Assembly: GCF_006345805.1 (NCBI RefSeq)
Contig: NC_043007.1
Location: 10,664,001-10,728,000 of the forward strand
Reading direction: 5' to 3'
DNA: 64,000 bases
DNA from: Octopus sinensis
Taxonomy: Eukaryota
Shown: in pieces, positions 4,873 through 48,713 of the stretch
How positions within the stretch are numbered: the first letter of the stretch is position 1
How the letters are laid out: each line of letters opens with the position of its first letter
Notes under the pieces: generated by a model
The model's input: only the letters and a program-made list of their open reading frames with translations
Database searches by the model: none
Told to the model about the DNA's origin: nothing
Position numbers and translations under genes: made by a program

Positions 4873-4948
4873 AGCTGATGGAAAAACATAATAACACAAA
4901 CCTAATTGTTTGATGTTCCGTAATCTCTGAAATTGTACTGTATTGGTG
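4873..4948 (-). pseudogene. SAMHD1-like fragment (N-terminal [22 protein letters not shown] segment)
   Basis: GAAGCTGATGGAAAAACATAATAACACAAACCTAATTGTTTGATGTTCCGTAATCTCTGAAATTGTACTGTATT matches 15445-15520. Confidence 0.85.
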
Positions 4949-5145
4949 CTGGTGGTGGTCGTGGTGGTGGTGGTGGTCGTGGTAGTAGTAGTAGTAGTAG
5001 TAGTAGTAGTAGTAGTAGTAGTAACAGTGGCGGTTGCTGCTTCTAAATTTCACTTTCACTATTAATCTACTGCGAATTAAATCCGTCATATTAACCGTGT
5101 GTGTGTGTGTGTGTGTGTGTGTGTGTGTGTGTGTGTGTGTGTGTG

Positions 5146-5376
5146 TGGTTTCGCGGAATTTCCTGATTTACCAATGATAAGATCTTTTATGAAAGCAATT
5201 TCATCGGGCTCAATTTTTTCTTTAACATGTGGGTTCTCTTTAAGAAGATGATCCAACATTTGACACGATGCATCTTCATGATTCCATCTTTTATCTGTTC
5301 TTCGATATCCATCAATAAAATCTTTAAAGACATGCGAAAAAGGCGCATGTCCTAAATCATGACACAAACAAGCAAT
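5146..5376 (-). pseudogene. SAMHD1-like fragment (HD motif region)
   Basis: Within ORF 5086..5703: [75 protein letters not shown], bounded by (GT)n and (AGT)n; most similar to the 47472-48713 copy. Confidence 0.9.
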
Positions 5377-5907
5377 TATTGTAGTAGTAGTATAGTAGTA
5401 GTAGTAGTAGTAGTAGTAGTAGTAGTAGTAGTAGTAGTAGTAGTGTTGTTGTTGTTGTTGTTGTTGTAGTAGTAGTAGTAGTTGTTGTAGTAGTAGTAGT
5501 AGTAGTAGTAGTAGTAGTAGTAGTTGTGATGCGGTGGTGGTGGCAGCAGTTGTTGTAGTAGTAGTAGTAGTAGTAGTAGTAGTAGTAGTAGTAGTAGTAC
5601 AACAAGAACAGCAACAGTAGGATCGAATAAGTTTCACTTTCTGTAGTAAAGTACTGCGAAGATTGTCAGTTGTTTTGATAATTGTATGCGTGTGTGTATG
5701 CATGTGTATATGTGTGTCTGAATAACTGTGTGTAAATGTGTTCGTGTGTATGTCTGTGTATGTGTCTGATCTACATGTGTGTGTGTGTGTGTGTGTTCGT
5801 TTGTGAGTGCGTGCGTGCGTGCGTGTGTATGTCTGTGAATGTGTATGTGTGTGAGAGAGAGAAAGAGAGAGAGAGAGTTTATTGGAAAAGGAAGATGGAA
5901 TTATCTA

Positions 5908-6285
5908 CCGGGTTCAGTCCCAGTGCGTGGCACCGTGGGCAAGTGTCTTCTACTATTGCCTTGGGCCGACCAAAGCCTTGTGAGTCGATTTGGTGGAAGG
6001 AAACTGAGATAAGCCCGTTGTATATATATATATATATGTGTGTGTGTGTGTATGTATGTATGTGTGTGTATATGTTTCGTGTGTCTGTGCTTGTCTCTCC
6101 AACATCGCTTGACAACCGATGCTGGTGTGTTTACGTCCCCGTAACTTAGCGGTTCGGCAAAAAGAGACCGATAGAATAAGTACTAGGCTTACAAAGGAAT
6201 AAGTCCTGGCGTCGATTTGCTCGACTGTAATGGCGGTGTTCCATCATGGCCGCAGTCAAAATGACTGAAACAAGTAAGTAAAAGA
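5908..6285 (+). mobile_element. SINE family A (5-prime truncated)
   Basis: CCGGGTTCAGTCCC...GACTGAAACAAGTAA, reverse complement of the family A consensus at 2568-2993. Confidence 0.75.
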
Positions 6286-46200: not shown

Positions 46201-46544
46201 GGTGGTGGCGGCGGTATTAGTAGTAGTAGAATCGTGCTTCTTTCACTTTCAGTATTAAACTGCTGCGCACAAAATCCGTCATTTTGTGAGAAGAGAGAAG
46301 AGAGAAGAGAGAGTCTGTATTTGTGCGTTTGTCTGTCTATGTAAGTCTGTGTGCGCTGGTGTGTTTATTACAACCAAATCATCAACAAAAATTCTCTACT
46401 CGTATGTTTGTAGAGTTACACTATGAAACAGTGTTTTAAAAATAAGAAAAATACATGTTAAAATTTATAGAAATCGAATGCATTTATTTAAAGGAAAATA
46501 TTTCTCGTGCAAACAACAATTATCGTTCGTTTAATATTCCTAAC

Positions 46545-47310
46545 ATCAAGGCGGAAGCGCTAACACGCCGGGCGAGATGCTAAGCGGTATTTCGTCTGCC
46601 GCTACGTTGTGAGTTCAAATTCCGCCGAGGTCGACTTTGCCTTTCATCCTTTCGGGGTCGATAAATTAAGTACCAGTTACGCACTGGGGTCGATGTAATC
46701 GACTTAATACCTATGTCTGTCCTTGTTTGTCCCATCTATGTTTAGCCCCTTGTGGGTAATAATGAAATAGGTATTTCGTCTGTCTTTACATCCTGAGTTC
46801 AAATTCCGCCGAGATCGACTTTACCTTTCATCCTTTCGGGGTGGATTAAATAAGTACCAGTTACGCACTGGGGTCGATATAATCGTACTTTATCCGTTTG
46901 TCTGTCCTTGTTTGTCCTGTTTGTGTTTAGCTCCTTGTGGGTAGTAAAGAAATAGGCATTTCGTCTGTCTTTACGTTCTGAGTTCAAATTCCGCCGAGAT
47001 CGATTTTGCCTTTCATCCTTCCGGGGTGGATTAAGTAAGTACCAGTTACGCACTGGGGTCGATATAATCGTACTTTATCCGTTTGTCTGTCCTTGTTTGT
47101 CCTGTTTGTGTTTAGCTCCTTGTGGGTAGTAAAGAAATAGGCATTTCGTCTGTCTTTACGTTCTGAGTTCAAATTCCGCCGAGATCGATTTTGCCTTTCA
47201 TCCTTTCGGGGTCGATAAATTAAGTACCAGATGCGTATTGGGGTCCATGTAAACGACTTGCCTCCTCCCTCAAATTCCGGGCCTTGTTCCTAGAGTAGAA
47301 AGGAATAATC
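46545..47310 (+). mobile_element. Head-to-tail multimer (about 4 units, ~185 bp period) of SINE family B, inserted in the 3-prime flank of copy 5
   Basis: GAGTTCAAATTCCGCCGAG recurs at about 46610, 46795, 46980 and 47165; the gene 3-prime flank homology resumes on both sides. Confidence 0.8.
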
Positions 47311-47471
47311 CTAACATCAGAATCGGAACTTCCAATATAATTCAGTTCTCATATGGTTTCATTGGTTTCTCCTCTTTTATTCGTTATTTTGGTTCTATTT
47401 CTTTATTAGTTTTTTTTTTCTTTCTAGATTCTTGCTTCTTTCTATTTTTTCATTAATTATTACTCTTTATT

Positions 47472-48713
47472 TTAATGGTTCGCTTTCATTTTCTTTCTTG
47501 GATTTTCACTTTCCTTTTGAAAATAATATCTGGTATTCATACAAAATTTCTTTGGAAGTAAAAGCATCTCTTCCAGTTTAACTTCTTCACTTGATATATA
47601 TTTGAATGATTTGTTATCATTCTTATGATAAAATGGTATTTTCTCTAATGGATTTCCTTCTCCAGCTCCATAATTAATACTGGCATCACAGAATTTCTTT
47701 TTGTCCGGTTCTTTGCCTTGGTCATTTCCATCCCCGACTGTACGTTTGTGTTCATAAGACCGATGGATTATATCCTTCAATTTATTCCGAGCCTCTTTGA
47801 GATTATCATTATCCTCATTCTTTAATATCTCCTCCAAAATACTATCTGTAAAATAAGTAAATTTCTTCATATCGTCGACTTTTTCGAAAATTTTCAGGTG
47901 TTTATCTGCGGATTTGAAGGCCTCGCCAAGTAGTTTATTAAACAGAAGAACAGTTTTGTGTTGGTAAGCTGTTTTATGTAATCGATATCGAGAATAAAAC
48001 ATGTCATAGAAATCATCAACAGTTTTGTCTCTGTAGCATATTTCATTGTCTATGACTCTGGACATTTTAATCATTCTTTCGTGATCAAATGACTTTCCAA
48101 TACCAAGAAAATGGGAATCTCTCGCCAGATAATCCCATTTATCAACGTCGATGTTATAGGAAGCATTGTTGATAATTTGGTAAAGAAATTGTGGTTTCGC
48201 GGATTTTCCTGATTTACCAATGATAAGATCTTTTATGAAAGCAATTTCATCAGGCTTCAGTTTTTCTTTAACATGTGGGTTCTCTTTAAGAAGATGATCC
48301 AACATTTTACACGATGCATCTTCATGTTTCCATTTATTATCTGTTCTTCGATTTTCATTAATAAAACCTTCAGAGACATGCGAAAACGGCGCATGTCCTA
48401 AATCATGACACAAACCAGCAATTTCCACGCAAAGTATATCGCGTTCAGATACTTTCGGAGGAGCCTTTTGTTGGTTAAGATGACGAATCATTTTCCCAGC
48501 TAAGTAACATGTCCCCAGACAATGCTCGAATCTATTATGCGAAGCTGATGGAAAAACATAATAACACAAACCTAATTGTTTGATGTTCCGTAATCTCTGA
48601 AATTGTATCGTATTGATAATCTCTACACAGAGAGGCGGCAACTCCATAGATCCGTGAATAGCGTCATGAAAAACCTGATACGAATTAGTACCGTTTGTGA
48701 TGGCCATTATCAT
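47472..48713 (-). CDS. SAMHD1: SAMHD1-like HD-domain dNTP triphosphohydrolase, copy 5 (about 411-413 aa)
   Basis: Single-exon ORF with all catalytic motifs (HNRFEH, CHDLGH, WKHEDAS, IDVDKWDY) and a basic C-terminal tail RKKMKANH; the start could be the ATG at 48713 or the ATG two codons downstream. Confidence 0.92.
   Translation of the reverse strand: MIMAITNGTNSYQVFHDAIHGSMELPPLCVEIINTIQFQRLRNIKQLGLCYYVFPSASHNRFEHCLGTCYLAGKMIRHLNQQKAPPKVSERDILCVEIAGLCHDLGHAPFSHVSEGFINENRRTDNKWKHEDASCKMLDHLLKENPHVKEKLKPDEIAFIKDLIIGKSGKSAKPQFLYQIINNASYNIDVDKWDYLARDSHFLGIGKSFDHERMIKMSRVIDNEICYRDKTVDDFYDMFYSRYRLHKTAYQHKTVLLFNKLLGEAFKSADKHLKIFEKVDDMKKFTYFTDSILEEILKNEDNDNLKEARNKLKDIIHRSYEHKRTVGDGNDQGKEPDKKKFCDASINYGAGEGNPLEKIPFYHKNDNKSFKYISSEEVKLEEMLLLPKKFCMNTRYYFQKESENPRKKMKANH

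What the first reader, a model, noticed from the sequence alone, without database searches (positions are those of the whole stretch)
4873..48713. Expanded cluster of compact, intronless, SAM-less SAMHD1-like dNTPase genes
Seen: five full-length single-exon copies (three intact, two frameshifted) plus three fragments within 44 kb, in both orientations, each 389-413 aa and starting directly at the HD domain. By eye alignment to human SAMHD1 (a single multi-exon gene; antiviral and anti-retrotransposon dNTP-depleting enzyme), they lack the SAM domain, lack about 45 aa between the R451/K455 helix and the DYG..NP motif, and end near residue 556. They therefore lack the C-terminal T592 phospho-regulatory region. 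Inference: a lineage-specific, diversifying innate-immune dNTPase family freed from the usual regulation, in a genome full of retroelements.
Basis: partly seen in the sequence, partly recalled or inferred. Interest (0 to 1): 0.8.

Follow-up and report, generated by a model that had tools for sequence, protein, structure and literature searches.

The report
Octopus SAMHD1 gene array with dead paralogues
This octopus chromosome segment carries a real tandem array of short, single-exon relatives of the antiviral enzyme SAMHD1. The genes are under ordinary purifying selection, not rapid diversification, and one conserved sub-lineage, including one of the three "intact" copies here, has lost its catalytic residues while staying under selection.

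Summary
The window (Octopus sinensis CM016869.1, about 10.664-10.728 Mb) holds five full-length single-exon SAMHD1-like copies and three fragments. Three ORFs are intact. One copy has multiple lesions and one has a single 1-bp deletion.

The proteins lack a SAM domain, end near human residue 557, and adopt the SAMHD1 catalytic-core fold (TM 0.90-0.92). The linker deficit is about 27 aa, not the 45 or so estimated.

- The clade is octopod-specific (support 100/99) and extends beyond the window: at least 9 full-length copies in O. sinensis and at least 18 gene models in O. vulgaris.
- Lack of a SAM domain and of T592 is typical of non-vertebrate SAMHD1.
- The single-exon state predates the compact clade.
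- Copies spread by segmental DNA duplication.
- dN/dS is 0.34-0.39, and no 30-codon window exceeds 1.
- Allosteric-pocket residues are largely kept, although D137 is N.

Copy C belongs to an "HN" subfamily with D207N, H215Y, H233N and usually D311N. This subfamily is conserved in three Octopus species, has four intact ORFs in O. sinensis, and shows ω of 0.29-0.43. It is probably a non-catalytic nucleotide-binding paralogue.

I found no paper describing any of this. Interest is moderate.

The parts
14420..15620 (-). Copy A: SAMHD1-like pseudogene (active-type codons).
   Evidence: tblastn in two frames. The lesions are ATG changed to ATA at 15620-15618, a 1-bp deletion giving an in-frame TAG at 15407-15405, and 1-bp insertions near 15394 and 15342. 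dN/dS against B is 0.78 and against E is 0.72.
16939..18161 (-). Copy B: full-length active-type copy with one 1-bp deletion at about 17921/17922 (TTAAAC to TTAAC).
   Evidence: The O. vulgaris orthologue P0009 reads through this site. This is either a recent loss or an assembly indel, and it is unresolved.
26219..27394 (-). Copy C: intact 391-aa ORF of the HN type (D207N, H215Y, H233N, D311N). Predicted to be non-catalytic.
   Evidence: ORF, site table, HN clade at 96/96, ω of 0.35-0.43 against other HN genes with p from 4e-6 to 3.5e-10.
30130..31299 (+). Copy D: intact 389-aa active-type ORF. All metal and catalytic residues are kept. D218Q, Y374C and Q375K are changed.
   Evidence: AF2 model with pLDDT 92.6 and TMq 0.90-0.92 to human and fungal SAMHD1.
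47472..48713 (-). Copy E: intact 413-aa active-type ORF with the full catalytic set and E at position 218.
   Evidence: 97% identical to O. vulgaris P0012.
4879..4938 (-). Fragment matching residues 36-55 of copy E.
   Evidence: tblastn, 95% identity.
5146..5376 (-). Fragment matching residues 98-174. It is the remnant of an E-like copy in a degraded segmental duplicate.
   Evidence: tblastn, 82%. blastn 5144-5377 matches 48190-48423 at 92.7%, and 1-3620 matches 41685-45322 at 94.6%.
7012..7288 (-). Fragment matching residues about 57-148, with a frameshift.
   Evidence: tblastn in frames -1, -2 and -3. blastn 7019-7280 matches 48278-48537 at 91.7%.
27395..30129 (.). Spacer of the head-to-head C/D pair. 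About 465 bp upstream of each ATG is homologous (27395-27859 with 30129-29661). The middle is trinucleotide microsatellite.
   Evidence: blastn 26225-27859 matches 31297-29661 at 87%. Upstream alignment.
13807..18681 (-). Tandem duplication unit pair holding A and B (13807-16138 and 16370-18681, 92% identical), including the 5' and 3' flanks.
   Evidence: Flank alignments.

Best explanation
WHAT IT IS
This is part of a birth-and-death tandem array of single-coding-exon SAMHD1-family genes. The array arose in the octopod lineage and grew by direct and inverted segmental DNA duplication. It holds two functional classes.

(1) Active-type genes: D, E, and B if its 1-bp deletion is not real.
- They keep all four metal ligands (H167, H206, D207, D311).
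- They keep R164, H210, H215, H233, K312, Y315, D319 and R366.
- They keep nearly all AL2 residues and half of the AL1 residues.
- They most likely still work as nucleotide-activated oligomeric dNTP triphosphohydrolases.
- They probably have an altered AL1 ligand preference (D137N, with K116 and N119 lost).
- They have no SAM domain and no C-terminal phospho-switch.

(2) HN-type genes: C, plus three more about 100-140 kb away.
- They have replaced D207, H215 and H233, and usually D311.
- They keep the phosphate-, substrate- and allosteric-pocket residues.
- They remain under purifying selection.
- They are most likely non-hydrolysing nucleotide-binding proteins.

My preferred guess for the HN type is a regulatory subunit that co-assembles with the active paralogues.

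SHOWN VERSUS INFERRED
- Shown: gene content, phylogeny, residue states, selective constraint and fold.
- Inferred: enzymatic activity, oligomerisation, the role of the HN type, and any antiviral or anti-retroelement function.
For: - Copies and lesions.
- Homology and fold: E = 1e-76 to human SAMHD1; HD domain only; AF2 pLDDT 92.6 and TMq 0.90-0.92 to 4bzc, 6txc and 9mr6.
- Phylogeny: octopod compact clade at 100/99, Argonauta sister to Octopus, four Octopus subfamilies, HN clade at 96/96 with members from O. sinensis, O. vulgaris and O. bimaculoides.
- Residue table.
- More copies: three further intact 413-aa HN ORFs and one D-type ORF in L001.
- Selection: ω of 0.34-0.39 among active and mixed pairs; ω of 0.29-0.43 for 9 of 10 HN pairs, with Fisher p from 2e-4 to 3.5e-10.
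- Duplication mode: units include flanks.
- Independent assembly: at least 18 O. vulgaris models, CAI9729836-857, in the same subfamily order.
- Protein evidence: peptide KDETESFTYSQEELDER is residues 361-377 of the neighbouring D-type 407-aa protein A0A6P7SWR5; the insert-type A0A6P7U4P1 was detected with 16 peptides in O. vulgaris skin mucus (PMC11431876).
- Experimental basis for residue roles (PMC7311409): H215A has no detectable activity yet still tetramerises; H233 binds the Mg of the Fe-Mg centre; D137N switches the AL1 activator from GTP to XTP.
- Metal ligands and AL residues: PMC12042053.
Against: - There is no direct transcript or peptide evidence for the window's own copies or for any HN-type gene.
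- No biochemistry exists for any cephalopod SAMHD1.
- The D type carries D218Q, and D218A lowers human kcat about 40-fold. It also carries Y374C and Q375K, so it may be a weak or altered enzyme.
- Human dimer-patch residues Y146, L428 and Y432 are N, E and K here (read from the alignment), so the oligomeric state cannot be assumed.
- ω of about 0.35 is only moderate constraint.
- One HN pair (L1a/L1c) has ω of 0.61, which is not significant.
- Gene conversion among paralogues could distort dS.
Confidence: 0.65

Rival explanations
1. All intact copies are active, constitutively deregulated dNTPases forming a rapidly diversifying antiviral and anti-retroelement arsenal.
For: - D and E keep every catalytic residue.
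- The array shows birth-and-death dynamics.
- Two surface stretches (D residues about 140-167 and 288-331) have ω of 0.87-0.95.
- Other paralogues carry a 130-160-aa repeat insertion at the same linker.
- SAMHD1-like proteins rise in the mucus of stressed or senescent octopus.
- TE fragments and SINE-like repeats surround the genes.
Against: - Gene-wide ω is 0.34-0.39, and no window exceeds 1.
- Copy C and three neighbours lack D207, H215 and H233, and most lack D311.
- Allosteric-pocket residues are retained.
- No infection-response data were found.
Confidence: 0.15
2. Housekeeping subfunctionalisation. The paralogues divide ordinary dNTP-pool control among tissues or stages. The HN type is a harmless leftover or a minor regulator. 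There is no immune role.
For: - Purifying selection throughout.
- SAMHD1's primary biochemical role is dNTP homeostasis (PMC12042053).
- No annotated Octopus orthologue of the less-derived P0062-type gene was found, so the array may provide the only SAMHD1 activity in Octopus.
Against: - Housekeeping genes rarely form arrays of 9-18 members with ongoing gene death.
- An octopod transcript of the P0062 type exists (P0089), so the basic gene may simply be unannotated in Octopus.
- Detection in skin mucus with condition-dependent abundance fits a defence or stress role at least as well.
Confidence: 0.15
3. Artefact or junk. The array is an assembly duplication (haplotigs) or a set of decaying processed pseudogenes without function.
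For: - Two of the five copies are broken and three fragments are present.
- RefSeq models across the array are chimeric.
- No exact gene product is on record for the intact window ORFs.
Against: - Copies differ by 8-20% at the DNA level, which is too much for haplotigs.
- The independent O. vulgaris assembly has the same array at 97-99% protein identity.
- ORFs of 389-413 codons stay open at dS of 0.3-0.5 with ω well below 1.
- Peptides exist for close relatives.
Confidence: 0.03

Closest known systems
Human/vertebrate SAMHD1 (SAM + HD dNTP triphosphohydrolase)
   Same: - Same HD catalytic-core fold (TMq 0.90-0.92) and about 38-40% identity.
- D and E keep H167, H206, D207, D311, R164, H210, H215, H233, K312, Y315, D319 and R366.
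- AL2 residues R333, R352, K354, N358, H376, K377 and K523 are kept.
- AL1 residues Q142, R145, D330 and R451 are kept.
   Different: - No SAM domain.
- About 54 aa shorter within the core, including a linker about 27 aa shorter.
- Ends near residue 557, so there is no T592 switch or Vpx-binding tail.
- RxL (451-453) reads R-S-Y.
- D137N, K116A/Q, N119H/Q, R372T, N380L.
- Single coding exon.
Rhizophagus irregularis SAMHD1 (PDB 9MR6), a characterised SAM-less SAMHD1
   Same: SAM-less and lacking T592. It is the best structural match (E = 2.5e-33, TMq 0.90-0.91). It shows that SAM-less homologues can be active tetrameric dNTPases with relaxed allosteric dependence (PMC12042053).
   Different: The fungal enzyme keeps D137 (its D34) and K116 (its K13), and it is a single active enzyme. 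The octopus set is a multi-gene array with N at position 137 and a catalytically degenerate subfamily.
Argonauta 446-aa / P0062-type cephalopod SAMHD1-like genes
   Same: Nearest outgroup to the compact clade. SAM-less, with a single coding exon. P0062 itself also has N at position 137.
   Different: This type retains N119 and D218, a linker about 15 aa longer and a C-terminal helix about 17-20 aa longer. No array is known for it.
Degenerate-active-site SAMHD1-like paralogues in cyprinid fishes and gastropods
   Same: About 9-10 of 149 family representatives have lost HD-centre residues. They come from taxa with expanded SAMHD1-like families: Garra, Cirrhinus, Chanodichthys, Physella, Batillaria and Lymnaea. 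This is the same phenomenon, a dead paralogue arising after expansion.
   Different: Independent origins and different substitutions, for example H206Y/D207N/D311R/H215Y in cyprinids. None has been characterised, and no paper was found.
Engineered human SAMHD1 catalytic-site mutants (H206R/D207N, H215A)
   Same: The HN type naturally carries D207N and loses H215. H215A binds nucleotide and tetramerises without hydrolysis. H206R/D207N proteins have been crystallised (7ltt and 7lu5).
   Different: Those are laboratory constructs. The octopus HN genes are natural, multi-copy, conserved across species and under selection.

Membership tests
SAMHD1 family (eukaryotic HD-domain dNTP triphosphohydrolases) | HD domain, with significant full-core sequence homology to SAMHD1. 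| tested here: met
   PF01966 at E from 4e-6 to 5e-13. phmmer E = 1e-76 to human SAMHD1 over residues 115-545.
SAMHD1 family (eukaryotic HD-domain dNTP triphosphohydrolases) | SAMHD1 catalytic-core fold. | tested here: met
   AF2 pLDDT 92.6 and pTM 0.92. Foldseek TMq 0.90-0.92 to human, pig and fungal SAMHD1.
SAMHD1 family (eukaryotic HD-domain dNTP triphosphohydrolases) | Metal ligands H167, H206, D207, D311, and catalytic R164, H210, H215, H233. | tested here: met
   Met for copies D and E, and for the codons of A and B. See the separate row for copy C.
SAMHD1 family, as an active enzyme: copy C / HN subfamily | Metal ligands H167, H206, D207, D311, and catalytic H215, H233. | tested here: not met
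   Copy C has D207N, D311N, H215Y and H233N. The same changes are in O. vulgaris P0011 and P0006, O. bimaculoides P0005, and L001 copies a-c, where D311 is kept in a and b.
SAMHD1 family (eukaryotic HD-domain dNTP triphosphohydrolases) | Guanine-specific allosteric site 1 (D137, Q142, R145, plus K116 and N119). | tested here: not met
   Q142 and R145 are kept. D137 is N in every compact-clade member. K116 is A/Q/S/T and N119 is H/Q (and the N-terminal sequences). In the human enzyme D137N switches the activator from GTP to XTP.
SAMHD1 family (eukaryotic HD-domain dNTP triphosphohydrolases) | Allosteric site 2 residues (V156, F157, R333, R352, K354, N358, R372, H376, K377, K523). | tested here: met
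   Nine of ten are conserved or conservatively replaced (F157Y). R372 is T or A.
SAMHD1 family (vertebrate-type architecture) | N-terminal SAM domain. | tested here: not met
   No SAM hit. The ORFs start at human residue 115. SAM is present in Mytilus, Liolophura, Branchiostoma and other homologues.
SAMHD1 family (vertebrate-type architecture) | C-terminal regulatory region (T592 phosphosite, RxL cyclin motif). | tested here: not met
   The protein ends near human residue 557. Positions 451-453 read R-S-Y.
SAMHD1 family (eukaryotic HD-domain dNTP triphosphohydrolases) | dNTP triphosphohydrolase activity and nucleotide-induced tetramerisation. | not testable with these tools
   Requires recombinant protein assays.
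Processed retrogene | Intronless copy of an intron-containing parent, with a poly(A) remnant and target-site duplications. | tested here: inconclusive
   The CDS is one exon. However, the nearest less-derived gene in Argonauta is also a single exon. The flanks are homologous between copies, so present copies arose by DNA duplication. The A-rich 3' flanks are shared and not diagnostic.
Pseudoenzyme (HN subfamily) | Catalytic residues lost, with the ORF, the fold-determining residues and cross-species conservation kept under purifying selection. | tested here: met
   Expression is not shown.

The most novel reading that the evidence does not exclude
The HN-type genes encode a natural "substrate-trap" SAMHD1: a non-hydrolysing nucleotide-binding subunit. 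It might co-assemble with the active paralogues to tune or gate dNTP depletion. Alternatively it might act on its own as a dNTP or nucleic-acid sensor, or as a decoy for pathogen antagonists. Similar dead paralogues arose independently in cyprinid fishes and gastropods. Pseudo-SAMHD1 regulators would then be a recurrent and so far undescribed layer of this defence and dNTP-control system.
Probability: 0.3. Interest if true: 0.75.

Novelty: new variant of a known kind. Interest (0 to 1): 0.52.

Why it matters
SAMHD1 is a central regulator of dNTP pools and a restriction factor. In mammals it is a single gene.

An animal with a 9-18-member array offers a natural experiment on how this enzyme's regulation can be rebuilt. 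The array includes members with a changed activator pocket (D137N) and a conserved catalytically dead class that keeps its nucleotide pockets.

If the dead paralogues regulate the active ones, that would be a new control principle for dNTP depletion. Fish and snail genomes hint that it may be general.

Practically, RefSeq gene models in this array are chimeras of different paralogues. Expression and proteomic studies in octopus are therefore currently mis-assigning reads and peptides.

Tried and rejected
- Exact look-ups of the three intact window ORFs and of an L001 HN ORF among called genes and transcriptome assemblies found nothing. The D-type 407-aa ORF is recorded only in the genome. This route gave no transcript evidence.
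- I first took the mucus peptide as evidence for an HN-type protein, because P0002 (HN N-terminus) shares it. I rejected this after showing that P0002 is a chimeric model and that the peptide lies in the D-type 407-aa gene.
- A search of the proteome supplements for HN-specific and generic family peptides found none. The stored files are truncated, so this is uninformative.
- I looked for an Octopus orthologue of the Argonauta 446-aa gene. None appeared among the top 120 hits. An unidentified transcript (P0089, SRR11869391) is 64% identical, and its 3' end matches the window's SINE-like repeat. It is probably from an octopod, but the species is unknown.
- The retrogene hypothesis is inconclusive (see the membership table).
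- A TE- or virus-borne origin is rejected. The clade nests inside cephalopod and metazoan sequences, and the flanks show no element structure.
- No tRNA genes were found.
- Literature searches for SAMHD1 combined with octopus, cephalopod, mollusc expansion, pseudoenzyme, or tandem duplication found no description of the array.

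
Full report
WHERE THE WINDOW IS
A 262-aa ORF from the window is recorded on Octopus sinensis chromosome record CM016869.1 (GCA_006345805.1). This places the window at about 10,664,001-10,728,000. The best protein hits are O. vulgaris (97-99%), O. sinensis and O. bimaculoides, all annotated as "SAMHD1-like" or "HD domain-containing".

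OBSERVATION
The ORF list, tblastn and a DNA alignment confirm five full-length copies and three fragments.

| Copy | Window position | State |
|---|---|---|
| A | 14420-15620 (-) | Broken by several lesions: ATG to ATA; a 1-bp deletion creating an in-frame TAG at 15407-15405; two 1-bp insertions |
| B | 16939-18161 (-) | One 1-bp deletion at about 17921/17922; its O. vulgaris orthologue P0009 reads through |
| C | 26219-27394 (-) | Intact, 391 aa |
| D | 30130-31299 (+) | Intact, 389 aa |
| E | 47472-48713 (-) | Intact, 413 aa |

The fragments lie at 4879-4938, 5146-5376 and 7012-7288.

Pfam reports only an HD domain. phmmer gives E = 1e-76 to human SAMHD1, aligning D residues 1-316 to human 115-459 and 328-377 to human 497-545. 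The proteins therefore start at the catalytic core and stop near human residue 557, without T592.

From R451 to the DYG motif there are 55-56 residues in mammals and 28 here. The linker deficit is about 27 aa, not about 45.

An AlphaFold model of D is confident (pLDDT 92.6). It superposes on human, pig and fungal SAMHD1 cores at TMq 0.90-0.92.

ARRAY ARCHITECTURE
Self-blastn shows three features.
- A tandem unit pair holds A and B (13807-16138 and 16370-18681, 92% identical).
- C and D form a head-to-head inverted pair that shares about 465 bp upstream of the ATG (87% overall).
- Positions 1-5377 are a degraded duplicate of 41685-48423, in which an E-like copy is reduced to fragments.

All copies share the roughly 25 bp before the ATG. 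A to D share about 300 bp more, and the 3' flanks are homologous for about 170-400 bp. Copies therefore multiplied by segmental DNA duplication.

The array extends beyond the window. A 50-kb locus about 100-140 kb away holds three intact 413-aa ORFs, one intact 407-aa ORF and a fragment.

In O. vulgaris at least 18 models carry accessions CAI9729836-857 on one chromosome, in the same subfamily order. The array is therefore not an assembly artefact.

PHYLOGENY
A maximum-likelihood tree gives these results.
- All Octopus copies plus two Argonauta hians genes form one clade (100/99) on a long stem. Argonauta is sister to Octopus.
- The nearest relatives are SAM-less proteins of 446-484 aa (Argonauta P0062, plus unidentified transcripts).
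- Typical mollusc SAMHD1s are longer, and many have SAM domains.
- Octopus copies fall into four subfamilies: insert-bearing (532-574 aa, with a repeat-rich insertion in the same linker), E type, D type and HN type (96/96).

Gene structure was also checked. The Argonauta 446-aa gene, an Argonauta compact gene and the O. bimaculoides HN gene are each a single coding exon. The single-exon state therefore predates the compact clade, and no intron-bearing parent is visible in octopods.

ACTIVE-SITE AND ALLOSTERIC RESIDUES
Human numbering was transferred through the alignment.

D and E keep H167, H206, D207 and D311. They also keep R164, H210, H215, H233, K312, Y315, D319 and R366.

The whole compact clade has D137N and lacks K116 and N119. 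It keeps Q142, R145, D330 and R451, and nine of ten AL2 (second allosteric site) residues.

In the human enzyme D137N changes the activator at AL1 (the first allosteric site) from GTP to XTP without harming catalysis (PMC7311409). The regulation is therefore probably altered, not abolished.

The D type also has D218Q (D218A lowers human kcat about 40-fold) and Y374C/Q375K.

Lack of a SAM domain and of T592 is usual outside vertebrates (PMC12042053).

THE HN SUBFAMILY
- Copy C has D207N, D311N, H215Y and H233N.
- The same set occurs in O. vulgaris P0011 and P0006 and in O. bimaculoides P0005.
- L001 copies a, b and c carry it too, though a and b keep D311.
- H215A abolishes activity in human SAMHD1 while preserving tetramerisation, and H233 binds the second metal. 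The HN proteins are therefore very unlikely to hydrolyse dNTPs.
- All phosphate-, substrate- and allosteric-pocket residues remain.
- Four ORFs are intact in O. sinensis.
- dN/dS between HN genes is 0.29-0.43, with Fisher p from 2e-4 to 3.5e-10 for 9 of 10 pairs.

This looks like a maintained pseudoenzyme.

Among 149 family representatives, 135 keep all six key residues. About 9-10 have degenerate centres. These come from cyprinid fishes and gastropods. Dead paralogues therefore recur where the family has expanded. No paper on this was found.

SELECTION
Intact paralogues give ω of 0.34-0.39. The HD core is at about 0.1-0.2. The most relaxed 30-codon windows are D residues about 140-167 and 288-331, at 0.87-0.95, and none exceeds 1. 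The pseudogene A gives 0.72-0.78. Gene-wide diversifying selection is not supported. Site-level selection in the two loops cannot be excluded with these tools.

EXPRESSION
A skin-mucus proteome of O. vulgaris reports SAMHD1-like proteins that are more abundant in aquarium-kept and senescent animals (PMC11431876).
- The unambiguous peptide KDETESFTYSQEELDER is residues 361-377 of the neighbouring D-type 407-aa protein (A0A6P7SWR5 = XP_029642705.1).
- The insert-type A0A6P7U4P1 was detected with 16 peptides.
- No evidence was found for the window's own genes or for any HN protein.

ANNOTATION PROBLEM
RefSeq XP_029642718.2 joins the N-terminal half of E to the C-terminal half of C across about 21 kb. 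XP_036362954.1 joins an HN copy to a D-type copy.

VERDICT
The interpretation needs revision. This is an octopod-specific, segmentally duplicated array of SAMHD1 paralogues under purifying selection. It contains probable active enzymes with a modified activator pocket and a conserved non-catalytic class. Immune function remains an inference.

Noticed in passing
window 26219-27394 and 47472-48713; L001 10001-39553: RefSeq gene models are chimeras of different paralogues. XP_029642718.2 joins the N-terminal half of copy E to the C-terminal half of copy C. XP_036362954.1 joins an HN-type copy to a D-type copy about 28 kb away. Read and peptide assignment in this array will be unreliable.
   Followed up: yes
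window copies A/B, from about residue 311 of the CDS to about 590 nt downstream (acceptor TTTTATAG|AAAATG in the 3' flank, near 14050 and 16620): O. vulgaris models P0009 and P0015 end in peptides (KCFPLTKRLRFL and NVFL) that are encoded in the 3' flank. This implies an optional GT-AG intron that would remove the whole C-terminal lobe. It may be real alternative splicing or an annotation artefact.
   Followed up: partly
paralogues P0007, P0010, P0215 and P0217 (O. sinensis unplaced scaffolds; O. vulgaris CAI9729852-857): A subfamily carries a 130-160-aa insertion made of roughly 20-aa repeats (such as SESKMQSNIEGTIKGKILGT). It sits exactly at the linker that is shortened in the compact copies. 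One of these proteins is the best-supported SAMHD1-like protein in the mucus proteome.
   Followed up: partly
window 46589-47259 and 56316-56918; interspersed copies such as 2566-2999, 36613-37003 and 63285-63697: There are tandem units of 185 bp and 303 bp with tRNA-like B-box motifs, and a roughly 400-bp interspersed repeat with at least 15 copies at 84-93% identity. These are SINE-like elements, although ARAGORN finds no tRNA genes.
   Followed up: partly
window 9924-10379 (+), 55886-56263 (-), 60949-61593 (+): Decayed transposable-element ORFs: a DDE_1 transposase fragment (E = 1.7e-14), an RVT_1 fragment and a zf-RVT fragment.
   Followed up: partly
window 3261-4523, 27535-29465, 44945-46344, 48710-50631, 52752-53478: Very long tri- and tetranucleotide microsatellites (GTG, TGG, ATA, ACAT; 550-580 bp each) flank several SAMHD1-like copies. 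They generate spurious long homopolymer ORFs on both strands, and they may promote the rearrangements seen in the array.
   Followed up: no
L003/L004 (Logan SRR11869391 and SRR11869384), protein P0089: A 2.3-kb transcript-like contig encodes a 452-aa SAM-less protein that is 64% identical to Argonauta P0062. Its 3' end matches the window's SINE-like repeat (90-97% over 30-47 nt). It is probably from an octopod, so a less-derived SAMHD1-like gene may exist unannotated in Octopus.
   Followed up: partly
P0222, P0224, P0320 (cyprinid fishes); P0227, P0330, P0326, P0278 (gastropods): SAMHD1-like paralogues with degenerate HD centres occur in other expanded families, for example H206Y/D207N/D311R/H215Y shared by three cyprinids. 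They appear to be independent origins and are apparently undescribed.
   Followed up: partly
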